NCBI GenBank assembly: GCA_964035545.1
Contig: CAXIUT010000064.1
Coordinates: 6,611 to 70,610, forward strand
From: Bugula neritina
Taxonomy: Eukaryota > Animalia > Bryozoa
Direction: 5' to 3'
DNA length: 64,000 nt
Shown here: piece by piece, positions 202 to 50,700 of the stretch
Numbering within the stretch: position 1 is the first letter of the stretch
Layout: the number at the start of each line of letters is the position of its first letter
Program-made: the position numbers and the translations under genes
The notes under the pieces: generated by a model
What the model was told of the DNA's origin: nothing
Database searches by the model: none
Seen by the model: the letters and a program-made list of their open reading frames with translations, nothing else

Positions 202-801
202 TTACATATATTTTGCAATAAATATTATCAATTTATAAGCATACTGTATAGTAAATATTATTAAATGAACTACTAATCAAAGTAAAAATACATAAAGATA
301 AACTATAATCATTAATATCAGTTGATTTAGACCAGGATAACCTGGAATTAGTGTGTTCTCTGCTAATCCTGTAAGAATTTTGTTTATTACGTATAAATAT
401 CCTCTATTCATCTTTAAATCATACTTCAATTCTTTGTGAGTTTTCTTAATCAAACCTTTTATTATAGTGTAATGTTTCTCTATAGCATCTTTACTATATC
501 TTTTATTTAAATTATCTATACTCTCTAGAATCATACTCTTTAGTGTGATTTCAAACGGTATAACTTTAGATTTAATTGCTTTACGTTTATACTTGTATAA
601 AATATATTGTTTATAGCGTCGTCAAAGTCTCTTTAATTTACCTTTACTGCGCTCTTTTTTTAAGTTTTTTTTACGATTTATACGTGCAATTATTACTAAT
701 ATTGGATCTGGTTTAGATCTAGGCTTTCTTCCTTTACGTTTACGTCTAAAGTAAAGTCGTTCTCATTTATCTAGGAGTTTAATAAAATTTTTTTTAGTCA
801 T
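202..801 (-). CDS. Unrecognised 199-aa ORF, GYP family member A (basic N-terminus, PGYP motif, C-terminal hydrophobic segment)
   Basis: Code-4 open frame from ATG 801 (preceded by TAA) to TAA 202, extending track ORF 277..534; contains KHYTII...E...DL...IPGYPGLNQL, aligning without gaps to paralogues at 3462, 4738 and 10213. Confidence 0.7.
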
Positions 802-1139
802 TTATTTAGTTAGTTATCTAATAAATTAATAAGTATACAACAGTTATTTAGGTGTATTCATATGTGTGTATATTTAGATACGTAATTGTAACTTTTAAAG
901 TTTTAAATATTTTTATTAATATAGCTATTACCAGTTATATATATATATTGTCATTATATATATATATAACTATTTACTACTAAACAATTTATAAATAAGT
1001 TATTGCTATTTAATTTAATAATATAATTTGAAAAAGAAATGTTAAGTATTTTTTTTATTATAAAATATAATTTAAATAATTAAAAAAAATAAGTTATATA
1101 TATAAGTATGTATATATGTGTATGTATACTCGTATACTA

Positions 1140-1690
1140 ATTTTTTTTTTATTTTTCTGTTTATTATAACTAATAAAATATTAAGTTATAGCATATTTTT
1201 ACTCGTAAAAAAAAAAAAAATTATTTAATAGAATTTTTTTTTTACTTTTCTGTTATTATATATAATAAAACATTAAGTTATAACATATTTTTACTTGTAA
1301 AAAAAAAAAATTATTTAGTAGAAATTTTTTTTTTCTGTTTATTATATATAATAAAACATTAAGTTACAACATATTTTTACTTGTAAAAAAAAAAAATTAT
1401 TTAATAGAATTTTTTTTTTCTGTTTATTATATATAATAAAACATTAAGTTATATTATATTTTTACTCGTAAAAAAAAAAAAATTATTTAGTAGAAATTTT
1501 TTTTTTTCTGTTTATTATATATAATAAAACATTAAGTTATAACATATTTTTACTTGTAAAAAAAAAAATTATTTAGTAGAATTTTTTTTTTCTGTTTATT
1601 ATATATAATAAAACATTAAGTTATATCATATTTTTACTTGTAAAAAAAAAAATTATTTAGTAGAAATTTTTTTATTTTTTTTATTTCTAA
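1140..1690. repeat. Tandem array of ~85-95-bp AT-rich units (repeat family A, locus 1)
   Basis: About 6 copies of ttttctgtttattata..ataaaacattaagttataacatatttttacttgtaaaaaaaa..ttatttagtagaa. Confidence 0.9.
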
Positions 1691-1796
1691 ATAAATGAAG
1701 TACTTGTATACTGTATATTTACTAATATAAGTATAAATACATCTATATTGATACTTATAAATATACTTATATATATATCTATTTATTAATTATTAA

Positions 1797-1945
1797 ATAG
1801 ATTTGTATAAGAAATTTATAGCTTTAATTTATTATAAAATTGTTTAAAAGCCGATAGATATGGTATTTATATGGGATTTGTGTAAAAAAATTATACCTTT
1901 AATTTATTATAAAATTATTTAAAATTCAATAAACAAATAATTGTC
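1797..1945. repeat. Degenerate interstitial copy (~2 units) of the terminal 76-bp repeat
   Basis: agatttgtataagaaatttatagctttaatttattataaaa... matches the junction and reverse-orientation units of the 53.6-64 kb array. Confidence 0.8.
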
Positions 1946-2030
1946 GGCATTACCTTATCTCATAATATAAAGATATATCTATAACTTGTATATGTAATTT
2001 TAATTATTTTTTTATAATAAATAAATAATC

Positions 2031-2110
2031 TGAGATAAGATAGAATCGAACTACCACCGACAACGTCATTTGATTTACAGTCAAACGCATACCCACTCTG
2101 CTTTTATCTC
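2031..2110 (-). tRNA. trnY: tRNA-Tyr(GUA)
   Basis: Acceptor GAGATAA/TTATCTC, anticodon arm tttga-CTGTAAA-tcaaa, long variable arm, GTTCGA T-loop. Confidence 0.93.
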
Positions 2111-2166
2111 CTAATTTTAGTATATATATATTGATAGATCTATGCATATTTGTCTATACACTATAG

Positions 2167-2652
2167 TTAAAAACTATGCAATATAGAGTTAACTTGTGAA
2201 ATTTTTCCAAATCTTTTTATAAAAGGATCTTTTTTAAACCTTATACCTCTCCTGGTATACTTATTATATGTTCTTATACTGTTAAAAATTTTTTTTATTA
2301 AGAAAAAGTTTTCTCTTTTACTAAAAATTACAGTATAGTTTTGTCTTCTTATTCTAGAAAAATAAAAAATATTACTATTATATAATATTTTATATCAATG
2401 AGAATGGCCAAAATTAAATGTAAATTTTGATTTTTTTTTAAATAACCTAACTCTATAGGCTTTACCTCTCCATACAATCCTTAAATAATACAGTATAAAG
2501 GTATAAATATATATATATTCTATTAAACTTTTATACTTTTTTTTATAAAAAATATGTTTTTCATTACTTGGTAAATAGATTAAAATATTATTTATTTTTT
2601 TTAATTTTATAATATCATTAAAGGGGGTAATAAAGTTAATAGTTTTTAACAT
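2167..2652 (-). CDS. rpl6: Ribosomal protein uL6m (ymf60)
   Basis: RGKAYRV, FNFGHSHW and NKYTRRGIR motifs of L6; continuous in code 4 (161 aa). Confidence 0.88.
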
Positions 2653-2968
2653 TTATAAAAAATCCTCAAAAAAATATAATAAATACTTGAATACTAAAAA
2701 AAAAATTTTTATTAAATGTATATAACATAAGTAAATAAATCATTATTAGCAGATGTACTATAACTATATTAGTTATAGATCATATATAATACAGTAATAA
2801 TAGCGTTTTAAAGATTATAAAAAAAACAATTACATTACAACTATTTAATGCACTATAAATATATGTATATAAATTGAATTTTTTTATATTAAAGTGACTA
2901 TAAGATATAACAGTATACCTTAATATATAAATATAATTTATTAATTTAAAGTTTGTTTTTCCTATCAC
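2636..2968 (-). CDS. Hypothetical 110-aa hydrophobic protein, possibly a diverged relative of the small partner ORF at 8985-9194
   Basis: GTG start, open through TGA to TAA 2636; shares a TVIS stretch and the DNA gatataacagtat with the 9194 ORF. Confidence 0.4.
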
Positions 2969-3461
2969 TTTATATAATTTAAATAATTAAAAATAAGTTA
3001 TAGTTTTAAAAGTATTCAATTTAATTGTATATATATATATATATATATAGATAAATAAAACTATAAATTACTATATTATAGTAAAACATCAACATTATAC
3101 AGATTATATAGTTTATTATAAATACGTATATTAACATTAATAAGCAGTGATAATAAAATTTTGCTGTTTCTTAAATTATATTAATATGTTAAAAATATAA
3201 AATAATTAATTTACTAAATTTTTGAAATATTTATTTTTTTTTATAATTTTTAACCACATGTAAGTATGTATGCGTATATTAAAAAAAAAAAAAAATAAAT
3301 TAATAATATTTAAGTTATTATATCAACAAAAAAATTTTACTAATTTATTAAAGTGTAAATATAACATAGTTTTTATATACGTTTAAATATGGTATAAAAA
3401 AATTAATAAAAAGAGAAAGAAAATTTAATATTAAAAATTAAAAACTTATTAATACTCTTAT

Positions 3462-4043
3462 TTAAAATCACCATCCAAATATTTGTCAAAAAATAGAGCT
3501 CTTTATTTTTTCTTCTAATTTCCTCTTATCTTTCTCAAATTCAGTTGGGAAAAGATAAATACTTAAACATACTGAATATATATATGTTATAAGAAACATA
3601 AACAATATTACTAATAATAGTAAAAACAGATTCATAAGTCAAAATAACATTCGACTTAATAGTGGATAGCCAATAAAGATTTCTCCTGTTTCTATTTTTC
3701 TAACAATTTTTCTTCGTATATCTCTTAAACTTCAATCATTATTTCAATCATCCACTAATTCTAAAATAAAATTTTTCAACATACCACCCAATATATGTTT
3801 ATGTCTCTTTAGTTTATTTATGTCTTTTTTAAGAACATCTTTTAATAAACTAAGATCCCTTTCTGTTTCATTTACATATTTTAAAAGTTTATCTTCTAAC
3901 TTATCATCTCATCTTTTATGTTTTTTTTTTATAATAGATTGACGGGAAAGTCTTTGGGGTTTATTTATAAAGCTATTAAAATGAGTTTTCACTCATCTAT
4001 AAAATCTAAATACTATTTTAATAAATTTTGTTATTAATTTCAT
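3462..4043 (-). CDS. Unrecognised 193-aa ORF, GYP family member B
   Basis: Absent from the track because of TGA codons; MKLITKFIKIVFRFYRWVK...KYVNETERDL...RHKHILGGML...EIFIGYPLLSRMLFW followed by a hydrophobic helix. Confidence 0.8.
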
Positions 4044-4104
4044 TTATATATTATAAACATACACATAAACTATATATACTTATGTATATACATATACATT
4101 AAAA

Positions 4105-4212
4105 TTATAAAACTATAAGCACGGTATTTAAGTTTACTATTTTAGGAGATATAGCAGCATTAACTAATTTATGAACATAAAATTTTAATATATTCAACAT
4201 AATTCTTATCAC
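4105..4212 (-). pseudogene. Truncated small partner ORF upstream of member B
   Basis: MIRIMLNILKFYVHKLVNAAISPKIVNLNT aligns with MIREKFNVLKIYIRKLIDTVISPKVTNLDA (8985-9194); stops after 35 aa. Confidence 0.65.
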
Positions 4213-4737
4213 TTCATATTAAAAAAATTAAAATTAAAAAGTAAATTATATTTGTATGTGTATGTTATATTTACTATATTTATTAAAAATCATAATATAA
4301 TTATTTTTTATATAATATAGTTAAAAATTAATACGCTTATGAACACTGTTATTAAAACTATATAGAATTACGTCTATTTATGTCAATACATATATATATA
4401 TATATATGTATTAATAGTGTAATTAATAAACTAGTTATAGTTTTATATAAAGTTCTTATTAATCTATTTATTACTTTAAAATAATATTTTTTTAATTTTT
4501 ACTAAATTATTTTAGCATATAATGTCTAAGTATAGTTATGAAAACGAAATTTTTTGTGTCAATGTTATTAAACTTATTTAAAAAATATAGTATAATTATT
4601 AATAGTAGTAAAAAATCTAACGTTAAATGATTAAAGGTGTATTAATATTTTTATTTAAAACTAATTTTCAAAAAAAGGATTTTATTTTTTTTTTATATAT
4701 ATTTTCTGTTTTATAGCAGATACTATACAATTTTCTA

Positions 4738-5229
4738 TTAAAAAAACTTATCATAAAAGATTGATAATAGTCACAGAATGTTTCTAGTAATTTTTGCAAA
4801 AACTCATGGTGCATAAAACAATCATCATAATATTAACATTATTATCAATATTCTCGTTAATAACTGTATAAATTTCGCAAATCAATATAATATCTGACTT
4901 AATATAGGATAACCGGGAAATACTTCATAATTCTCTATTTTTTTAAAGATTTTTTCCCACGTATCTATTCAGTTTCATCTACTATATAAATTGCATTTTA
5001 TTTCTCAAATAAACTTCCGCCACATACTCCCCATAATAGACTTATGTTTATCTATTTCAGTTATATACGCTAAGAGTTTTTCCTCTAATATGTCCTCCTC
5101 TGTTTTGTCCTTTTTTTTAAGTACACGGACAGAACTTCCAATAAAATTATTATCAGGTTTATTAAATAAAGATTTTACTCATCTATAAAACCTAAATACT
5201 AGTTTAATTAAATTTTTTATTATAGCCAC
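4738..5229 (-). CDS. GYP family member C, copy 1 (163 aa)
   Basis: GTG start after TAA; MAIIKNLIKLVFRFYRWVK...KHKSIMGSMW...EVFPGYPILSQILYW...; TAA at 4738. Confidence 0.8.
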
Positions 5230-5285
5230 TTAACAAATTATAAATATATATTAAAATTCTATAAACTTTTATATAAATCATATTT

Positions 5286-5450
5286 TTATACATGTATATG
5301 TATATATATTAAAATTTTACATATTATTAATAATATAATTATTGTAAATACACAGGGAAAGTTATTTAAATTTATTATTTTAAGAAATATAAAGCTATTG
5401 ATTAATTTATAACTGTTAATTTTTAATATATTAAATTTTTTTACTATCAG
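5286..5450 (-). CDS. Small partner ORF, array copy 1 (54 aa, CTG start; may be degenerate)
   Basis: Gap-free homologue of 8985-9194, truncated at a TA-rich tract. Confidence 0.45.
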   Translation of the reverse strand: MIVKKFNILKINSYKLINSFIFLKIINLNNFPCVFTIIILLIICKILIYIHIHV

Positions 5451-5633
5451 TTAATATTAAAAAAAAAAACTAAAATTCAAAAGTAAGTTGTAGTTATATA
5501 TATATATATATAACACCTTTATTGTATTTATTAAAAATCATAATATAATTATTTTTTATATAATATAGTTAAAAATTAATACGCTTATGAACACTGTTAT
5601 TAAAACTATATAGAATTACGTCTATTTATGTCA

Positions 5634-5669
<36 letters not shown>

Positions 5670-5995
5670 TAATAGTGTAATTAATAAACTAGTTATAGTT
5701 TTATATAAAGTTCTTATTAATCTATTTATTACTTTAAAATAATATTTTTTTAATTTTTACTAAATTATTTTAGCATATAATGTCTAAATATAGTTATGAA
5801 AACAAAACTTTTTGTGTCAATGTTATTAAACTTATTTAAAAAATATAGTATAATTATTAATAGTAGTAAAAAATCTAACGTTAAATGATTAAAAGTGTAT
5901 TAATATTTTTATTTAAAACTAATTTTCAAAAAAAAAGAATTTTATTTTTTTTATATATATTTTCTGTTTTATAGCAGATACTATACAATTTTCTA

Positions 5996-6487
5996 TTAAA
6001 AAAACTTATCATAAAAGATTGATAATAGTCACAGAATGTTTCTAGTAATTTTTGCAAAAACTCATGGTGCATAAAACAATCATCATAATATTAACATTAT
6101 TATCAATATTCTCGTTAATAACTGTATAAATTTCGCAAATCAATATAATATCTGACTTAATATAGGATAACCGGGAAATACTTCATAATTCTCTATTTTT
6201 TTAAAGATTTTTTCCCACGTATCTATTCAGTTTCATCTACTATATAAATTGCATTTTATTTCTCAAATAAACTTCCGCCACATACTCCCCATAATAGACT
6301 TATGTTTGTCCATTTCAGTTATATACGCTAAGAGTTTTTCCTCTAATATGTCCTCCTCTGTTTTGTCCTTTTTTTTAAGTACACGGACAGAACTTCCAAT
6401 AAAATTATTATCAGGTTTATTAAATAAAGATTTTACTCATCTATAAAACCTAAATACTAGTTTAATTAAATTCTTTATTATAGCCAC
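5996..6487 (-). CDS. GYP family member C, copy 2 (163 aa)
   Basis: Same 492-nt open frame as copy 1. Confidence 0.8.
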
Positions 6488-6543
6488 TTAACAAATTATA
6501 AATATATATTAAAATTCTATAAACTTTTATATAAATCATATTT

Positions 6544-6708
6544 TTATACATGTATATGTATATATATTAAAATTTTGCATATTATTAATAATATAATTAT
6601 TGTAAATACACAGGGAAAGTTGTTTAAATTTATTATTTTAAGAAATATAAAGCTATTGATTAATTTATAATTGTTAATTTTTAATATATTAAATTTTTTT
6701 ACTATCAG
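6544..6708 (-). CDS. Small partner ORF, array copy 2
   Basis: Same 165-nt frame as 5286-5450. Confidence 0.45.
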   Translation of the reverse strand: MIVKKFNILKINNYKLINSFIFLKIINLNNFPCVFTIIILLIICKILIYIHIHV

Positions 6709-7248
6709 TTAATATTAAAAAAAAAAACTAAAATTCAAAAGTAAGTTGTAGTTATATATATATATATAACACCTTTATTGTATTTATTAAAAATCATAAT
6801 ATAATTATTTTTTATATAATATAGTTAAAAATTAATACGCTTATGAACACTGTTATTAAAACTATATAGAATTACGTCTATTTATGTCAATACATATATA
6901 TATATATATGTATATATATATATTAATAGTATAATTAATAAACTAGTTATAGTTTTATATAAAGTTCTTATTAATCTATTTATTACTTTAAAATAATATT
7001 TTTTTAATTTTTACTAAATTATTTTAGCATATAATGTCTAAATATAGTTATGAAAACAAAACTTTTTGTGTCAATGTTATTAAACTTATTTAAAAAATAT
7101 AGTATAATTATTAATAGTAGTAAAAAATCTAACGTTAAATGATTAAAAGTGTATTAATATTTTTATTTAAAACTAATTTTCAAAAAAAAGGATTTTATTT
7201 TTTATATATATATTTTCTGTTTTATAGCAGATACTATACAATTTTATA

Positions 7249-7740
7249 TTAAAAAAACTTATCATAAAAGATTGATAATAGTCACAGAATGTTTCTAGTA
7301 ATTTTTGCAAAAACTCATGGTGCATAAAACAATCATCATAATATTAACATTATTATCAATATTCTCGTTAATAACTGTATAAATTTCGCAAATCAATATA
7401 ATATCTGACTTAATATGGGATAACCGGGAAATACTTCATAATTCTCTATTTTTTTAAAGATTTTTTCCCACGTATCTATTCAGTTTCATCTACTATATAA
7501 ATTGCATTTTATTTCTCAAATAAACTTCCGCCACATACTCCCCATAATAGACTTATGTTTGTCCATTTCAGTTATATACGCTAAGAGTTTTTCCTCTAAT
7601 ATGTCCTCCTCTGTTTTGTCCTTTTTTTTAAGTACACGGACAGAACTTCCAATAAAATTATTATCAGGTTTATTAAATAAAGATTTTACTCATCTATAAA
7701 ACCTAAATACTAGTTTAATTAAATTCTTTATTATAGCCAC
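7249..7740 (-). CDS. GYP family member C, copy 3 (163 aa)
   Basis: Same 492-nt open frame; synonymous CCT>CCC in the PGYP motif. Confidence 0.8.
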
Positions 7741-7796
7741 TTAACAAATTATAAATATATATTAAAATTCTATAAACTTTTATATAAATCATATTT

Positions 7797-7961
7797 TTAT
7801 ACATGTATATGTATATATATTAAAATTTTGCATATTATTAATAATATAATTATTGTAAATACATAGGGAAAGTTGTCTAAATTTATTATTTTAAGAAATA
7901 TAAAGCTATTGATTAATTTATAATTGTTAATTTTTAATATATTAAATTTTTTTACTATCAG
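7797..7961 (-). CDS. Small partner ORF, array copy 3
   Basis: Same 165-nt frame; LDNFPY variant is closer to the 8985-9194 copy. Confidence 0.45.
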   Translation of the reverse strand: MIVKKFNILKINNYKLINSFIFLKIINLDNFPYVFTIIILLIICKILIYIHIHV

Positions 7962-8492
7962 TTAATATTAAAAAAAAAAACTAAAATTCAAAAGTAAGTT
8001 GTAGTTATATATATATATATATAACATCTTTACTGTATTTATTAAAAATCATAATATAATTATTTTTTATATAATATAGTTAAAAATTAATACGCTTATG
8101 AACACTGTTATTAAAACTATATAAAATTACGTCTATTTATGTCAATACATATATATATATATATATATTAATAGTGTAATTAATAAACTAGTTATAGTTT
8201 TTTATAAAGTTCTTATTAGTCTATTTATTACTTTAAAATAATATTTTTTTAATTTTTACTAAATTATTTTAGCATATAATGTCTAAATATAGTTATGAAA
8301 ACAAAATTTTTTGTGTCAATGTTATTAAACTTATTTAAAAAATATAGTATAATTATTAATAGTAGTAAAAAATCTAATGTTAAATGATTAAAAGTGTATT
8401 AATATTTTTATTTAAAACTAATTTTCAAAAAAGGGATTTTATTTTTTTTATATATATTTTCTGTTTTATAACAGATACTATACAATTTTCTA

Positions 8493-8984
8493 TTAAAAAA
8501 ACTTATCATAAAAGATTGATAATAGTCACAGAATGTTTCTAGTAATTTTTGCAAAAACTCATGGTGCATAAAACAATCATCATAATATTAACATTATTAT
8601 CAATATTCTCGTTAATAACTGTATAAATTTCGCAAATCAATATAATATCTGACTTAATATAGGATAACCGGGAAATACTTCATAATTCTCTATTTTTTTA
8701 AAGATTTTTTCCCACGTATCTATTCAGTTTCATCTACTATATAAATTGCATTTTATTTCTCAAATAAACTTCCGCCACATACTCCCCATAATAGACTTAT
8801 GTTTATCCATTTCAGTTATATACGCTAAGAGTTTTTCCTCTAATATGTCCTCCTCTGTTTTGTCCTTTTTTTTAAGTACACGGACAGAACTTCCAATAAA
8901 ATTATTATCAGGTTTATTAAATAAAGATTTTACTCATCTATAAAACCTAAATACTAGTTTAATTAAATTTTTTATTATATTCAA
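8493..8984 (-). CDS. GYP family member C, copy 4 (163 aa, TTG start)
   Basis: Same 492-nt frame; TTG start abuts the TAA stop of the upstream small ORF. Confidence 0.8.
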
Positions 8985-9194
8985 TTAAAAACATACGAAG
9001 AAAAATCAAAATTGTGCATATATTATCATAAAACATATCTTTGCTATATACATTAAAATTTTATATATTATTAATAATATAATTATTGCAAATATATAGG
9101 GAAAGGCGTCTAGGTTTGTTACTTTAGGGGATATAACAGTATCGATTAATTTACGAATGTAAATTTTTAATACATTAAATTTTTCTCTTATCAC
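8985..9194 (-). CDS. Small 69-aa membrane protein, full-length partner ORF
   Basis: GTG after TAA; reads through TGA 9006 to TAA 8985; hydrophobic C-terminal half. Confidence 0.65.
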
Positions 9195-9270
9195 TTAATA
9201 TAAAAAAAAACTAAAATTAAAAAGTAAATTATAGCTGTATACAGTTTAATATGTATATATATATATAGAC

Positions 9271-10096
9271 ACATTAAAATAGCTAATTTTAGTTTTAATA
9301 TATACCCAATCTTACCCATAAAACGTAAACCTAAAAAATTTTTAAATTATTAAATATATATATATATAATTAATAACTTAATTAGCATTAGTTTATTATC
9401 TTTTTATATAAATAGTTTTTAGAAATTTTATAAAAAAAATTTCATTTAAAATCACTTTAAAAATTAAAATTTTATAAACGTTATTATATCTAATAAATAG
9501 AGTAAATATTAAAAAATTTTTTATAATAATTAACAAAAATAAATACAAAAAATTTAATAACATTTACCTAAGACAACAATTAGATAAAGATATTAATTTA
9601 TATTTTATTTATTTGTCTCCATAAAGTAGCATACGTATATTAGTATTACTGTTAATACCGTACTGATATACAGATTAGTTCAAAATTAATTAATACAATT
9701 AAAATACTATTATTAAATGCAGTAAAATTAATATTAAGAATAAATCTTTTGTCTGTATACCTCCCTTAACATAGTTAAATTTACCAATACTTATAACACG
9801 AATATACACATAACTTTCATGTGTACATTTTCTACATTAAAAATTTTTTAAATCTATTAAAAGTATTTAACTTTAAGAATCCTATTTTACTAAACTTACT
9901 CACCATGACGCTATTTTATTTATTTTTTAAATTTTTAATTTAAAAAATAATTTCATTCAACTTGCATGTGTTATACATTTAACTAACGTTCACTCTAAGC
10001 TAAGACCACACTCATAACTTTAATTAAGATATTATACGTTTAACTAGTGTTCACTCTAAGCCAAGACCGCACTCATAATTTTAATTACTAATCTTA
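9271..10096 (-). pseudogene. Duplicated 5' part of the SSU rRNA locus with a tandemly doubled 5' end
   Basis: Colinear with 48686-49556; the ~60-nt 5' terminus occurs twice (~9970-10027 and ~10031-10087) and the conserved GATC is changed to GGTC. Confidence 0.9.
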
Positions 10097-10212
10097 TATA
10101 TGTATATATACGATTAAGTAACGGGGGAAATTTTTAATACTTCAAAACTTATATTTTAAAATCAAATGTTACTAGTTTACTTCCTAATTAGTTAATATAA
10201 AAAAAAAATTTT

Positions 10213-11058
10213 TTACTTACTTGCAAGAAAAACATTAATAATTCAATCAATATCAATATAAACATAATAAGGCTCTACACCATATATATGTGGATATAAC
10301 GCTTCTGGATAAAAAGCTATGGCCTTTATAAATTTAAAAACTAATATATTCTTTATTTCTACAAGTGTAAATTGACATTTATATCAAACATAGAAAAATA
10401 TACCAATATCTTCAAGAATACGCATTATTACCACTGCTATTAATCCCAACAATACTGACACAAATACATAGTATAATTTGTTTAATAATGGATAACCAGG
10501 AAACACTTTATTATCTTCTGTTTTTTTAATAAATATTTTTCACGTCTTCCGCAAACTACGATTACTTCGTAAATCACTTTTTGTTTCTTCTATATTTTTT
10601 TTAAGCATAATGATCAATATGTAATAATGTTCTTTTAATTTATTTATCTTATTATCAATACTATTTTTTATTTTGTTTATGTAGTCTATAAATCGGTTTT
10701 TTAATACGCTACTTTGTTGTTTTAACCTATATATCTCCTGCTTAAGACTAGTCTTTAATATATTTTTCAACTCGTTTAAATCTTTTTTTGTCTCATCTGT
10801 ATATTTTATATAACTATCTTTAAGTATACTACAATGTTTTTTTAACTTATTTATCTTTTTCTTAAAAATATTCTTCAGTTTACTAAAGCCTTCTTTTATC
10901 TTGTTTGTAGACTTTTTAAACTTGTTATTTATATTACTTTTAAAACTATTCTGTAATATACTATACTCTTTTCTAATTAAACTTAAAATTCGTATACAAT
11001 TTTGTTTTAACATATTATAATATGTTTTTAATTTATTTATTATTTTAAAAATATACAC
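10213..11058 (-). CDS. Unrecognised 281-aa ORF, GYP family member D (long repetitive coiled coil plus hydrophobic segment)
   Basis: Track ORF 10540..11058 continues through TGA to TAA 10213; INKLK(K/E/T) internal repeats; KVFPGYPLLNKL. Confidence 0.8.
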
Positions 11059-11085
11059 TTTAACCCTTTTTATGAATGGGATAGG

Positions 11086-11156
11086 TAGGAGAAATAGGAT
11101 TTGAACCTATAATAACAGTCTTAAAACTGTAGTTTTTCCCTTTAAACTATTCTCCC
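11086..11156 (-). tRNA. trnW-related tRNA-like gene with an altered 6-nt anticodon loop (UUUAAG) and discriminator A; identity undetermined
   Basis: Full cloverleaf stems (GGGAGAA/TTCTCCT, ACAGT/ACTGT, ATAGG/CCTAT); highly similar to trnW at 37699. Confidence 0.7.
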
Positions 11157-11873
11157 TTAAACGTACATTTATATGTATATATACATATTAATAATAAAAG
11201 AGTTATAATAATTGTTACAAATAAAAAATTTATTTATTACTAATAACTGTAAATTATAATAGTATTTACTTAAAAATTAAGTTAATAATATAGTTTTTAA
11301 TTTAATAACTATTTTTTCTTCTTTTTATAATGTAATTTAAAAGTGATAAAAACTTAGTATACCTATAGATATAATAATTAAAATTATATAAAAAAAAATA
11401 TATTTATTAAAATTGTTATACGTATACATACATATATATATATAATCGTAACTTTTAAGGTTTTAAATATTTTTGTTAATACAGCTATTACCAGTTATAT
11501 ATTGTTATTATATGTATGTATATATACATGTGTATATTTATAAATTTAAATAAATAAACATAACTAATCGTATTAAACCCATAATAGTTATTATTACCAT
11601 ATGTATTAAAGGTCGTATAGTAATTATATATATATAAAAAATTTGCTGATAGATATCTAAAAATTATTCTAATATTTTTTAATTTATTAATAAAACTATA
11701 TATTTATTTTTTATAAATATATTTATTTAATGCATCTATAAAACATAAGTATAGTTAATTGTAAATATGTCTATAATTATTAAATTATTACTTTTTTATT
11801 AAACTATATTTTATTTTAATTTAAAGTAAACTTTAAACAGTTAAATCGGATTAAAAAAAAATATTGATCTTGA

Positions 11874-12107
11874 TTATATATACAAAGATAGATATAAATA
11901 TAAAAATTCTATATGATAAATAATTTGTAAATATAAAAGTTCTATATGATAAATAATTATCAGTAGTATATAAGCTAAATAGCACATTATAATAAAGTAT
12001 ACAACGCATGTAGCTGCAGAATAAAATGATAAAATTTTACTTTTTTTTAAATTTTCTTGATGCATAAAAAATATAAAGATAGCTATTTTTATAAATTTTT
12101 GAAACAT
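11874..12107 (-). CDS. Hypothetical 77-aa membrane protein with an internal IIYHIExLYL duplication
   Basis: ATG preceded by TAA, open frame, hydrophobic C-terminus; no recognised homologue. Confidence 0.35.
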   Translation of the reverse strand: MFQKFIKIAIFIFFMHQENLKKSKILSFYSAATCVVYFIIMCYLAYILLIIIYHIELLYLQIIYHIEFLYLYLSLYI

Positions 12108-12249
12108 TTATTTTTTTTTATACTTTTTGTATATGTAATTATCTTTAAAAATTAATAATATATTTTATTTAGTAGTAGACAACTAAAAAATATTTTTTTT
12201 TATAGTTTCTATAAGCTACTATTGTTATATTAATTATTTTTTACTTTTG

Positions 12250-12560
12250 TTTTTAATACTTTCTTAAAATTTACTTATTAGTATATAATAGTGTTTTTTT
12301 TTAGTTTATTTATTTTTTGACTAATAACACTCTTTATTATACTTTTTAATTTACTAAATTCTCTTTACTTCGTTTATAATTTATAAACTTATCTCTTAAT
12401 ATACTGTTTTAATTTTTTACAGTATTTATCACTTTTTCAGTGACGCTCTTTAAAATATCTTAGTTTATTAAGATCTCTTTTTATTTTATTTGTATACTAT
12501 ATAGTATAAATTCGTTTGTTAATGTATTAACATAATCCTTTAATTTACCTATATTTTTAT
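12250..12560 (-). pseudogene. Decayed GYP-family coiled-coil ORF (similar to member D)
   Basis: Fragments reading YTNKIKRDLNKLR and INKLKK..HYYIL, with stops and frameshifts. Confidence 0.6.
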
Positions 12561-12599
12561 AAGTTTATTAATTAATATCTAGTTAAATGTATAATACAT

Positions 12600-12655
12600 T
12601 AATTAAAATTATAAGTGTGGTCTCGGTCTAGAGTGAACACTAGTTAAATGTATTA
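12600..12655 (+). pseudogene. Inverted copy of the SSU rRNA 5' terminus
   Basis: aagtgtggtctcggtctagagtgaacactagttaaatgta versus rns 5' gagtgtgatcttggcttagagtgaacgctagttaaatgta. Confidence 0.8.
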
Positions 12656-13466
12656 ATTAATACCTTTTTATTTTTTAAGTAAGTTTATAGTTCTTATATT
12701 ACTTTACATTTAGTATATCATAATAACTTTTTAATTTATTTATTATTTTTAAAAAGTTTTTTAATTTAATCAGTAAGTATAAGTATATAAATATGTATGC
12801 ATATACTTATAATTATAAGTTTTAAATTTTTTATTGTCTATATTTAGATAATTATCCTTGATTACGTTATAATTAATAAAAAAGTTATCTTATGTTAAGC
12901 GATTAAGAAAATAAAATAAATCTATTTAATTTAAGGTAAGGTTTTTATTTTACTGCTGTTAAATTTAACTTAAAATATAATAGAGTTTGGTATAATTATC
13001 TAATAATAACGTTAAAAAATTTAATATTAGATAATTAAAAATATATTAATATTTTTTATTTAAATTTAATCAAAAAATTAAATATATTAGTTTGTCTGTT
13101 TATATATATATTATAGTTTAAAATCTATTCAAATTTTCTCACGGTACTTCATTAAGAGTTGAGTCTTTTGTACTAAGTACATGAAGTTTATCTGTGTGTG
13201 TACGTGTATATGCATATGTATATATATATATTTAAAGAATTAAGATTAAAAAAAAAAATTTAAACTATAATAAATAAACACAATATAAATATATATATTA
13301 AAATTTTTAATACTGAATAAATAGGGAATATATTAGTGTATTTTAACGTATTAAAGTAACTGACGATTTTAAAAAGAAATTTTTTAGCCATTTATTTTTT
13401 TTTTAATTATATTAACAGTTAAATGAATAAATATAAATAAATATATGTGTGTATATGTGTGTATGT

Positions 13467-13745
13467 TTAAATATAATAAATAAGTAATATTTGAATTATT
13501 ATTATAATAAAAAATTTTACTAATTCATTAAAATTTAAAGATGATATAGTTTTTGTATGTGCTGAAATATATTGTAAAAAGTTTTTAAAAAAAAAAAAAC
13601 ATTTTTCCGCTAAATATTTATCTATCAAATATATAAAATTATTACCCAATAGATTTTTATAAAAAAAAAAAAAAAAATTTTTAATAAAATAATCTATAAA
13701 TAATCCATTTTTAAAACTGTTTTGATTTTTTAAAAAAAATTTCAT
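13467..13745 (-). CDS. ymf57: Ymf57 (split C-terminal part of Nad5)
   Basis: 92 aa; GLFIDYFIK motif and C-terminal helix resemble ciliate Ymf57. Confidence 0.65.
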   Translation of the reverse strand: MKFFLKNQNSFKNGLFIDYFIKNFFFFFYKNLLGNNFIYLIDKYLAEKCFFFFKNFLQYISAHTKTISSLNFNELVKFFIIIIIQILLIYYI

Positions 13746-13889: not shown

Positions 13890-14420
13890 TTTACTGTTAG
13901 GGGAAAAAATTTACCAAATTTTTTTTTATAATTTTTTTTTGTATATTATAAGTAATAAAACATTAAGTTATAACATATTTTTACTTGTAAAAAAAAAAAT
14001 TATTTAGTAGAATTTTTATAATTTTTTTTTATCTATTATTTATTATAAGCGATAAAATATTAAGTTATAATGTATTTTTTACTTTTCTGTTTATTATAGG
14101 TAATAAAACATTAAGTTATAACGTATTTTTACTTGTAAAAAAAAATTATTTAATAGAAATTTTTATAATTTTTTCTATCTATTATTTATTATAAGTAATA
14201 AAATATTAAGTTATAATATGTTTTTACTAGTAAAAATAAAAAAAAAAAAGTTCTAACCAAGTTTTTTTTTATAATTTTTTTTTTTATTTATTATAAGTAT
14301 ACTAATATTAAGTAGAAGTGTATTTTACTGTTAAAAAAAAAATTGGTAGAATTTTTTTATAAATTATAAGAGATATAGTATCAAGTAGAGATATAGTTTT
14401 TTTTTTATAAAATTAGTTTT
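13890..14420. repeat. Repeat family A, locus 2
   Basis: Several degenerate units of taataaaacattaagttataacatatttttacttgtaaaaaaa. Confidence 0.85.
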
Positions 14421-14881
14421 ATTAAATTTTTTAATCAAAAAAATCATAATTAATTTTTAATTTTTTAAAGTTATAATTTTTTTTTTTTCCCTTAAAAAAA
14501 AATAAATCGGTTTTAAAAAAAATATTTATCAATAATATATAATTATAAAAATCTATACAATATAAATCTATATAATACATAAATCTAATATAATTTTTAA
14601 AAATGTTATAAAGGTTTTTATATTTTATAGTAATAAAATTATTATTAATTTTATTATATGTTAAATTATTTCGAAAAATTAAATCAATATCTATAAAATA
14701 TAATATTTTAAAAAACTGAATATACGAAAATCATACATTATAAGATAGTCATTTATAATTTTTATTATAAATAAATGAATTTCAAATCATTGAAGAATCA
14801 ATTCTATGTAAAGTAGATAAACTTTTTTGTGCTATAGTACTATATAAAAGAATTGCACTTTTAAAAAATTCTACTTATAGT

Positions 14882-49619: not shown

Positions 49620-50700
49620 AAAAAATAAAGATAGATTTTTAATTTTTTTTTTTTGTTTATTATAAATAAAGTAATATCAAATAGAGATATGTTTTATTAA
49701 ATAAAAAAATTACTTAGTAGAAATTTTTTTATAAACTTTTTTTATCTATTATAAATATAGCAACATTAAACAAAAATATGTTTTTTTTTTACTGGTAAAA
49801 AAAAAATTTTTATTTATTATAAGTAAGGCAATATTTAGTGGATATATTTTAGTGATTAAAAAATACTTGGTAGAATTTTTTTTATCTATTATAAGTAATA
49901 AAATATTAAGTTACAATATATTTTTACTTATAAAAAAAAAAATATTTAATAGAAATTTTTTTTATTTTCTGTTTATTATAAGTAATAATACATTAAGTTA
50001 TAACATATTTTTACTTGTAAAAAAAAAAATATTTAATAGAAATTGTTATAATTTTTTTTTATTTATTATTTATTATAGGTAATAAAACATTAAATTATAA
50101 CATATTTTTATTTGTAAAAAAAAAAACTATTTAATAGAAATTTTTTTTATTTTCTGTTTATTATAAGTAATAAAACATTAAGTTATAACATATTTTTACT
50201 TGTAAAAAAAAAATATTTAATAGAAATTTTTATAATTTTTTTTTTTATTTATTATTTATTATAAATAATAAAACATTAAATTATAACATATTTTTATTTG
50301 TAAAAAAAAAAAAACTATTTAATAGAAATTTTTTTTACTTTTCTGTTTATTATAAGTAATAATCCGTTAAGTTATAACATATTTTTACTTGTAAAAAAAA
50401 AAATATTTAATAGAAATTTTTATAATTTTTTTTTATTTATTATTTATTATAGGTAATAAAACATTAAATTATAACATATTTTTATTTGTAAAAAAAAAAA
50501 CTATTTAATAGAAATTTTTTTTACTTTTCTGTTTATTATAAGTAATAAACCGTTAAGTTATAACATATTTTTACTTGTAAAAAAAAAATTATTTAGTAAA
50601 AATTTTTATAATTTTTTTTATCTATTATTAATAAAGTAACGCTGAATAAATATATTTTTTAGTGATCAAGAATAGTTTAAATAGAATTTTTTGAAAACTT
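49620..50700. repeat. Repeat family A, locus 3 (~95-105-bp units, about 7 good plus degenerate flanking copies)
   Basis: Same unit as 1140-1690 and 13890-14420, in the same orientation. Confidence 0.9.

What the first reader, a model, noticed from the sequence alone, without database searches (positions are those of the whole stretch)
202..11058. Unrecognised mitochondrion-encoded membrane protein family with a conserved H..E..GYP domain (7 intact copies)
Seen in code 4: four diverged proteins share a gap-free ~50-aa block. A (202-801): HYTIIKGLIKKTHKELKYDLKMNRGYLYVINKILTGLAENTLIPGYPGLNQL. D (10213-11058): HYYILIIMLKKNIEETKSDLRSNRSLRKTWKIFIKKTEDNKVFPGYPLLNKL. B (3462-4043): HKHILGGMLKNFILELVDDWNNDWSLRDIRRKIVRKIETGEIFIGYPLLSRM. 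C (four copies): HKSIMGSMWRKFIWEIKCNLYSRWNWIDTWEKIFKKIENYEVFPGYPILSQI. H, I(+3), E(+14) and GYPxL are invariant with identical spacing, preceded by a variable charged/coiled-coil region and followed by a hydrophobic helix. A decayed copy lies at ~12250-12560. It matches no ciliate mt gene I recognise. Inference: a birth-and-death family of membrane-anchored proteins under purifying selection; function unknown (membrane shaping, mtDNA anchoring, or selfish CMS-like effector are all open).
Basis: partly seen in the sequence, partly recalled or inferred. Interest (0 to 1): 0.85.

Follow-up and report, generated by a model that had tools for sequence, protein, structure and literature searches.

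The report
Orphan membrane-protein family in mitochondrial subtelomere
A ciliate's linear mitochondrial genome carries, next to one telomere, seven intact and two decayed copies of a fast-evolving gene for a small membrane-anchored protein that has no detectable relative anywhere else; it is a large example of the gene duplication already known at ciliate mitochondrial chromosome ends.

Summary
Seven minus-strand ORFs (A, B, C1-C4, D; 163-297 codons, readable only in code 4) share a gap-free block, H-x2-I-x10-E-x29-GYPxL, followed by about 40 hydrophobic residues. B, C and D are clearly homologous. A is a distant member that still scores well above shuffled controls.

Two decayed D-like copies exist: window 12137-12770, and a 91% duplicate beside the 61-bp telomere array, outside the window.

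No relative was found in Pfam, PDB, 5.8 billion clustered proteins, 1.84 billion representatives, the ESM Atlas or metagenome contigs.

In three related metagenomic ciliate mitogenomes, nad7-orf147-orf92-orf161 are contiguous. Here 10.8 kb holding B, C x4, D and a pseudogene sits between orf92 and orf161. A lies beyond orf161 next to the telomere. The family is therefore a lineage-specific subtelomeric expansion.

Evidence for constraint is moderate:
- ORFs far longer than chance allows, and copies that decay fast once broken.
- dN below dS, though dS is saturated.
- C ORFs more conserved than their spacers.

No RNA data exist and the function is unknown. The closest precedent is the block of subterminal unknown ORFs, paralogs and pseudogenes in Oxytricha mtDNA. 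Other first-stage readers of this scan also noted the family on this same DNA (s1-438040, s1-438114).

The parts
202..801 (-). Copy A, 199 aa. Most divergent member and nearest the telomere. TAA-ATG start; N-domain net charge about +35.
3462..4043 (-). Copy B, 193 aa, ATG start. Its first ~60 codons are 79% identical in DNA to those of the C copies, so it is unit 0 of the array.
   Evidence: (D11)
4738..5229 (-). Copy C1, 163 aa, GTG start directly after TAA.
5996..6487 (-). Copy C2, 163 aa.
7249..7740 (-). Copy C3, 163 aa.
8493..8984 (-). Copy C4, 163 aa, TTG start.
3862..9241 (.). Tandem array of about 1.25-kb units (about 4.3 units, 91-93% identical overall). ORFs are more conserved than spacers.
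10213..11106 (-). Copy D, 281-297 aa (likely GTG start at 11058). Its long N-domain holds internal repeats of the INKLK-x-H-xx-IL...ETKxDL helix.
9971..10087 (.). Two units of the 61-bp telomere repeat, about 130 nt downstream of D. The same arrangement is seen for D' next to the true telomere array.
12137..12770 (-). Decayed D-like pseudogene: many stops, GYP lost. An inverted 61-bp telomere unit sits at 12600-12653.
   Evidence: (I2)
2653..13469 (.). 10.8-kb lineage-specific segment between orf161 and orf92, which are adjacent genes in three related mitogenomes.

Best explanation
This is a lineage-restricted, fast-evolving family of mitochondrion-translated proteins. It arose and keeps turning over by segmental and tandem duplication in the recombination-prone subtelomere of a linear ciliate mtDNA.

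Each protein has three parts:
- a strongly basic, all-helical N-terminal arm made of a variable number of copies of one helix motif (INKLK-x-H-xx-IL...E);
- a short GYP turn;
- about 40 hydrophobic residues.

I infer that the hydrophobic stretch inserts into the inner membrane, either as one long helix or as a hairpin. By the positive-inside rule the arm would then stay in the matrix. The most likely role is an accessory membrane tether or scaffold whose basic arm contacts nucleic acid (mitoribosome or mtDNA) or a membrane complex.

Shown: the ORFs, their homology, their mitochondrial codon usage, the duplication history, the pseudogenes, and the absence from relatives and from databases.

Inferred: translation, membrane insertion, topology and any binding partner.
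For: Homology and the conserved block.

ORF lengths of 163-297 codons against 131 or fewer in 200 shuffles at 17% GC.

Start codons ATG, GTG or TTG immediately after an in-frame TAA in A, B and C.

Trp is TGA in 22 of 25 codons, as in canonical genes (87 of 89), so the ORFs are readable only by the mitochondrial code and are not recent imports. Frame-specific codon usage resembles that of canonical genes.

Constraint:
- Both broken copies are riddled with stops. D' has 3 frameshifts and 3 stops at only 6.5% divergence within the ORF, and the copy at 12.1-12.8 kb is also decayed, while four deeply diverged types stay open.
- B against C gives dN/dS about 0.43 overall and 0.33 in the block; C against D gives 0.18 in the block.
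- C ORFs show 4/492 substitutions and no indels, against 18/750 substitutions plus 16 indel columns in the spacers.

N-domain net charges are +35, +16, +7 and +35, and a hydrophobic stretch of about 40 aa follows GYP. AlphaFold gives helix-helix-loop(GYP)-helix. There is an internal helix repeat in D.

Lineage-specific insertion. Precedent in Oxytricha: PMC3318907.
Against: There is no expression evidence. No RNA run holds the region, and the laid contigs show only that the DNA is identical in four runs.

dS is saturated, so omega is unreliable, and comparisons involving A and the post-block regions give omega near 1. The codon-position bias between B and C is weak, 59/53/74.

G at third positions is twice that of canonical genes.

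Structure models are low-confidence (pLDDT 58-68), and no fold or sequence relative gives a functional hint.

The family's absence from related species means it is dispensable for core mitochondrial function. K-richness is partly a by-product of AT bias.
Confidence: 0.55

Rival explanations
1. These are non-functional or nearly neutral by-products of subtelomeric duplication. On this view the ORFs are young, are kept open mainly by recency and gene conversion, and encode nothing the cell needs. They may be transcribed only as part of the long polycistronic minus-strand transcript.
For: The family is absent from three related mitogenomes. Pseudogenes are common. Omega is near 1 in many comparisons and the codon-position bias is weak. 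G3 is elevated relative to canonical genes. The small ORF in the same repeat unit shows pN about equal to pS. The Oxytricha paper likewise infers pseudogene formation in its subterminal blocks.
Against: A, B, C and D are only 24-42% identical at the protein level with saturated dS, so they are not young, yet all four types keep 163-297 open codons. A 17% GC sequence gives at most 131 by chance. The same few residues stay invariant with fixed spacing. D' lost its frame at 6.5% divergence.
Confidence: 0.25
2. These are selfish or plasmid-derived cargo. A telomere-bearing linear mitochondrial element carrying a GYP gene integrated and spread. The proteins would then serve the element, for example in membrane attachment or replication advantage, or they would act like the plant CMS chimeric membrane ORFs.
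For: Telomere-type 61-bp units lie internally right behind D and, inverted, inside the decayed copy. The segment is an insertion between conserved neighbours. Oxytricha has a linear plasmid that bears mitochondrial telomeres and shares sequence with its duplicated subterminal region.
Against: No polymerase or other plasmid hallmark gene lies in the 10.8-kb segment. No separate contig in the 216-Mb assembly carries the family or the 61-bp repeat. Trp codon usage is native. PADLOC and PHROGs were not searched.
Confidence: 0.12
3. This is an extremely diverged, duplicated copy of a canonical mitochondrial gene, such as a ymf, ATP-synthase stalk, respiratory accessory or ribosomal subunit.
For: Ciliate mitochondrial genes are notoriously diverged (PMC3318907, PMC7961746). 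There is one weak, non-significant profile hit to chloroplast ATP synthase subunit b (E=0.35) and one to ApoO/Mic26 for D's coiled coil (E=0.014, below the cut-off).
Against: There is no significant hit to Pfam, or to PDB sequences, which as far as I know include Tetrahymena mitochondrial complexes with their Ymf subunits. The family HMM hits no other ORF of this mitogenome. Relatives with the same gene order have no counterpart at the site.
Confidence: 0.08

Closest known systems
Subterminal unknown-ORF blocks of the Oxytricha trifallax mitochondrial genome (Swart et al. 2012, PMC3318907)
   Same: Both are linear ciliate mtDNAs with blocks of ORFs next to the telomeres that have no homologues elsewhere. 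Both show segmental duplications whose identity falls with distance, paralogs plus pseudogenes, some duplicated ORFs under moderate constraint (dn/ds about 0.29-0.30 there), and telomere-associated sequence footprints.
   Different: No sequence similarity was detected in whole-database searches. I made no direct alignment to the Oxytricha ORFs. This case has a larger family with one conserved domain (four diverged types, a 4x tandem array and two pseudogenes). Most of it sits as an insertion between two conserved genes, not purely at the end. Trp codon usage here is native, whereas Oxytricha's block is UGG-enriched.
Lineage-specific ORFs (ymf or 'orfN') of ciliate mitogenomes
   Same: Mitochondrion-encoded, AT-biased, fast-evolving and without recognisable homologues.
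   Different: The ymf genes are single-copy and shared across genera or classes, and many are now assigned to complexes. This family is multi-copy and absent from the nearest available mitogenomes.
Plant CMS-type chimeric mitochondrial ORFs
   Same: Small predicted membrane proteins born from recombination or duplication in mtDNA, and lineage-specific.
   Different: CMS ORFs are chimeras of known gene pieces with a male-sterility phenotype. No chimeric origin was detectable here, and there is no comparable biology in a ciliate.
Terminal inverted-repeat duplications in Tetrahymena mtDNA (rnl, tRNAs) and nad9 tandem copies
   Same: Duplication of genes near the ends of a ciliate linear mtDNA, homogenised by concerted evolution.
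   Different: Those involve canonical genes. Here the duplicated gene is an orphan, and the repeats are direct, not inverted.

Membership tests
Known ciliate mitochondrial gene (ymf, respiratory, ATP synthase or ribosomal subunit) | Significant sequence or profile similarity to a described family or to a solved ciliate mitochondrial complex subunit | tested here: not met
   Pfam gave 0 families above cut-off. PDB phmmer and profile searches had best E values of 0.33 and 0.097. The 1.84 billion representatives gave 0 hits. Foldseek against PDB and the Atlas gave nothing.
Known ciliate mitochondrial gene (ymf, respiratory, ATP synthase or ribosomal subunit) | An ortholog at the syntenic position in related mitogenomes | tested here: not met
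   In L005, L009 and L012, orf92 and orf161 are 4-200 nt apart with no family member between them. The family HMM finds nothing in the fetched 18-20 kb per relative.
Subterminal duplicated orphan ORFs of ciliate linear mtDNA (Oxytricha type) | Location in the telomere-proximal part of a linear mtDNA | tested here: met
   The contig starts with a 5.1-kb 61-bp array. The family spans contig positions 5.2-17.7 kb.
Subterminal duplicated orphan ORFs of ciliate linear mtDNA (Oxytricha type) | Segmental or tandem duplications that produce paralogs and pseudogenes | tested here: met
   A 1.25-kb tandem array of 4 units; a 1.47-kb duplicate at 91% identity (D/D'); and two pseudogenes.
Subterminal duplicated orphan ORFs of ciliate linear mtDNA (Oxytricha type) | No homologues outside the lineage | tested here: met
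Subterminal duplicated orphan ORFs of ciliate linear mtDNA (Oxytricha type) | Some copies under purifying selection | tested here: inconclusive
   Omega is 0.18-0.43 for B/C/D, but dS is saturated. The ORF-versus-spacer test gives p=0.047.
Linear mitochondrial plasmid or integrated plasmid | A DNA or RNA polymerase gene, terminal repeats, and a free molecule | tested here: not met
   No polymerase-like ORF. No other contig carries the family or the telomere unit. Only internal telomere-unit relics are present.
Inner-membrane anchored protein | A hydrophobic segment long enough to span the bilayer, with flanking charge asymmetry | tested here: met
   The Kyte-Doolittle 19-aa window exceeds 1.6 over 35-42 residues after GYP in all four types, and the N-domains carry net +7 to +35. 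This is prediction only. Actual insertion is not testable with these tools.

The most novel reading that the evidence does not exclude
The GYP proteins could be a newly born, mitochondrion-encoded family of membrane tethers whose basic repeat arm binds mtDNA, its telomere or the mitoribosome. Under this reading, copy number and repeat number would be under ongoing selection, or would drive competition between mitochondrial genomes. That would make it a rare case of de novo gene-family birth and amplification inside an organelle genome.
Probability: 0.15. Interest if true: 0.75.

Novelty: new member of a known kind. Interest (0 to 1): 0.45.

Why it matters
Organelle genomes almost never hold multi-copy families of new protein genes. 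This one preserves every stage in a single molecule: an intact ancient paralog (A), a tandemly amplified type (C x4), a repeat-expanded type (D) and two decaying copies. It also has a clear insertion point relative to sister mitogenomes.

If the proteins are made, the family is a tractable model for how new membrane proteins are born in mitochondria, and for what linear-mtDNA subtelomeres contribute to that.

If they are not made, it is still a well-dated example of subtelomeric turnover, extending the Oxytricha observation to another ciliate group.

Tried and rejected
Searches that found nothing:
- Pfam scan of TGA-free pieces: no family. Only sub-threshold coiled-coil noise for D's N-domain.
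- PDB sequence search with a single piece and with a profile: nothing.
- The search for homologous proteins with A residues 61-174: none.
- Exhaustive HMMER of profile A5 against 1.84 billion representatives: 0 hits. Locally the same profile scores B, C and D at 52-76 bits, so family-level relatives would have been seen.
- ESM Atlas feature search: best 0.76, below noise.
- AlphaFold alone and with the small alignment: pLDDT 58 and 68, all helices. Foldseek against PDB and the Atlas shape search gave only generic helical rows.
- Motif scan of JGI metagenome contigs: 34 hits, all chance (GC 30-68%, no HMM score).

Alignment trouble: fragment alignments A1-A4 were misaligned by MAFFT and were discarded in favour of A5.

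Reads: four runs hold the DNA with no differences in A, orf161 or B, so no between-strain dN/dS was possible. Their kind is unknown, so they say nothing about expression.

Rejected ideas:
- The terminal ORF of relative L005, which sits at the position of A, looked similar at its first 12 residues but is not significant (450-478 of 500 shuffles score as high against A, B and C).
- The small ORF upstream of each C ('two-gene cassette') shows pN 0.25 against pS 0.22, so it was not counted as part of the family.
- The 3' flanks of A and C share 66-70% identity, but this is largely TA-microsatellite sequence.

Not resolved: the species could not be identified. The closest assembly, GCA_041156805.1 (rps12 93% identical), is too fragmented to show its subtelomere.

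Full-length C, which has many TGA codons, was never searched remotely.
Full report
**Setting.** The window is positions 6611-70610 of a 70,610-nt contig (C73) of a 216-Mb ciliate assembly. It is a ciliate-type linear mitochondrial genome:
- 17% GC.
- All recognisable genes lie on the minus strand: rps12, nad10, rpl2, nad7, cox1, cob, cox2, LSU and SSU rRNA, and five tRNAs including Trp(UCA).
- There is a 5.1-kb array of 61-bp repeats at the contig start.
- There are 77-bp arrays of alternating orientation at the other end.

The species could not be named with the tools. Earlier notes of this scan describe the host as a ciliate with about 20-nt introns.

In code 4 the seven ORFs are open exactly where stated, and each has 3-10 internal TGA codons. 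The alignment shows the gap-free block with invariant H, I(+3), E(+14) and GYPxL, preceded by a variable charged region and followed by a hydrophobic stretch.
- B, C and D are unambiguous homologues (phmmer E 1e-8 to 1e-25 at Z=1000).
- A is distant (14-22 bits; 9.8 with B as the query). The best of 500 composition-preserving shuffles for any pair reaches only 4.6-6.9 bits.
- A DNA pattern encoding the spacing hits A, B and D, against none in 100 shuffles.
- ORFs of 163-297 codons are far beyond chance at this composition: the longest ORF in 200 shuffles averages 83 codons and never exceeds 131.

**Family census.** A family HMM run on all six frames in code 4 finds the seven intact copies plus fragments of two broken ones, and no other ORF of the mitogenome.
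- D' lies just outside the window at contig positions 5247-6144. It is part of a 1.47-kb segment that is 91% identical to window 9971-11444. It has 58 substitutions, three frameshifting indels and three stop-creating changes relative to D.
- The second broken copy, at window 12137-12770, is collinear with D residues 20-219 but full of stops. 'FPGYPLLNKLYY' has decayed to 'FFSCLLLNKIYY'.
- The four C copies are a 1.25-kb tandem array. B is its diverged first unit, sharing about 79% DNA identity with C over the first 60 codons.
- No copy of the family or of the 61-bp unit exists on any other contig of the assembly.

**Anatomy of the proteins.**
- A and B start with ATG, C1-3 with GTG and C4 with TTG, each directly after an in-frame TAA.
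- Trp is encoded by TGA in 22 of 25 cases, as in canonical genes (87 of 89). The ORFs can therefore only be read by the mitochondrial ribosome and do not look like recent imports.
- The N-terminal domains are strongly basic (net +35, +16, +7 and +35). The 35-42 residues after GYP are hydrophobic, enough for one long transmembrane helix or a hairpin.
- In D the first half of the conserved block (KINKLK-x-H-xx-IL...ETKxDL) occurs at least twice. No shuffle out of 1000 reaches the observed score. B retains one and a half units. The 'variable coiled-coil region' is thus a variable number of copies of the same helix.
- AlphaFold models of A residues 61-174 are helix-helix-loop(GYP)-helix, but with low confidence (pLDDT 58 alone, 68 with the small alignment).

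**No relatives anywhere.** Because the tools translate with code 11, only TGA-free pieces could be sent to remote searches. All of the following were negative:
- Pfam.
- PDB sequences, by single piece and by profile.
- The 5.8-billion-cluster word search.
- An exhaustive HMMER search of 1.84 billion representatives with profile A5.
- The ESM Atlas.
- Foldseek against PDB and the Atlas shape search.
- A motif scan of JGI metagenome contigs, which gave 34 chance hits.

Locally, profile A5 scores B, C and D at 52-76 bits, which corresponds to E of 1e-9 or better in that library. Relatives as close as the paralogs are to each other would therefore have been found.

**Comparison with related mitogenomes.** The rps12 protein has hundreds of 74-93% identical relatives on AT-rich contigs from lake and other metagenomes. 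Six look-ups returned contigs with the same gene order as the window.

In three independent relatives (L005, L009, L012) nad7, orf147, orf92 and orf161 are contiguous. orf92 and orf161 are only 4-200 nt apart, and orf161 is followed within 0-2 kb by telomere-like repeats or the contig end.

In the window the same orf92 (13470-13745) and orf161 (2170-2652) are 10.8 kb apart. The interval holds the decayed copy, a tRNA-like gene, D, C1-4, B and orf116. A lies beyond orf161 and tRNA-Tyr, next to D' and the telomere.

The family HMM finds nothing in the relatives, and nothing with the basic-GYP-hydrophobic build is present there. The terminal ORF of L005, at the position of A, is not significantly similar. 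The closest assembly, GCA_041156805.1 (about 82% DNA identity), breaks right after orf92. The family is therefore a lineage-specific expansion whose age cannot be bracketed more tightly.

Relative L012 has its own subtelomeric paralogs (orf121/orf145 and two nad2-like orf158 copies). Turnover of small membrane ORFs at this end seems general in the group.

**Selection.** Between the four types, synonymous sites are saturated (pS 0.41-0.72).
- dN/dS is 0.43 for B-C overall, 0.33 for B-C in the block and 0.18 for C-D in the block.
- It is about 1 for comparisons involving A and for the post-block region.
- B and C differ at codon positions 1/2/3 by 59/53/74.
- Among C units 1-3 the ORF has 4 substitutions in 492 sites and no indels. 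The spacer has 18 in 750 plus 16 indel columns (Fisher p=0.047).

The strongest argument is qualitative. Four lineages that have diverged to 24-42% protein identity all keep long open frames and the same invariant residues. The two copies that lost constraint were broken after only a few per cent divergence. I read this as real but weak-to-moderate purifying selection.

**Expression.** This is unknown. No run on record as RNA holds the stretch. Contigs of four runs cover A, orf161 and B without a single difference, which shows only that the DNA is stable across those samples.

**History.** Two 61-bp telomere units sit about 130 nt behind D, just as the true array sits behind D'. An inverted unit lies inside the decayed copy. 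Two relic units of the far-end 77-bp repeat lie at 1800-1931. An 86-bp repeat family occurs at three places. The region is therefore a mosaic of former ends and recombination joints.

This matches the model proposed for Oxytricha, where successive duplications towards the telomere produced paralogs and pseudogenes in 5-kb and 14.5-kb blocks of orphan ORFs, some with dn/ds of about 0.3 (PMC3318907). A plasmid origin is possible but unsupported: there is no polymerase gene and no free element in the assembly.

**Verdict.** It is best filed as a new and unusually rich member of a known kind: subterminal orphan ORF duplication in ciliate linear mtDNA.

My preferred mechanism is a matrix-facing basic helical arm anchored in the inner membrane, acting as an accessory tether or scaffold. 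This is inferred from sequence alone (confidence 0.55 that the proteins are functional; much lower for any specific partner). The main rival is that they are near-neutral by-products of subtelomeric turnover (0.25).

Noticed in passing
window 11086-11156 (-) and contig C73:6122-6194 (L004): A tRNA-like gene (Rfam tRNA 57 bits) with an abnormal 6-nt anticodon loop, which ARAGORN cannot assign. It sits directly upstream of D and is duplicated together with D'.
   Followed up: partly
window 1800-1931; 1147-1685, 13935-14225, 49878-50629: Two relic units of the far-end 77-bp array lie between tRNA-Tyr and A. An 86-bp repeat family occurs at three separate sites. The subtelomere is therefore a mosaic of telomere-type repeats.
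   Followed up: partly
window 5289-5450, 6547-6708, 7800-7961, 8988-9194 (-): A small 54-69 aa hydrophobic ORF lies upstream of each C copy. Between copies 2 and 4, pN is 0.25 and pS is 0.22, so there is no sign of constraint. The 'two-gene cassette' idea is not supported.
   Followed up: yes
window 2170-2652 (-), 13470-13745 (-), 14434-14874 (-): orf161 (uL6-like motif 'RGKAYRVRL...GHSHW', not confirmed by Pfam), orf92 and orf147 are conserved across the related metagenomic mitogenomes, at 38-86% identity, and are real genes of unknown or unconfirmed identity.
   Followed up: partly
L007/L008 13197-20411+: Two lake-metagenome relatives carry a called ORF of 2893 aa downstream of the rpl2 block, where the window has orf688 and nad7. 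I did not examine it.
   Followed up: no
L012 17657-19786: This relative's subtelomere holds two copies of a nad2-like orf158 and a pair of paralogous small membrane ORFs (orf121/orf145). That is an independent case of subtelomeric duplication.
   Followed up: partly
window 2639-2986 (-): orf116 is a very hydrophobic ORF between orf161 and B. It has no counterpart in the relatives.
   Followed up: partly
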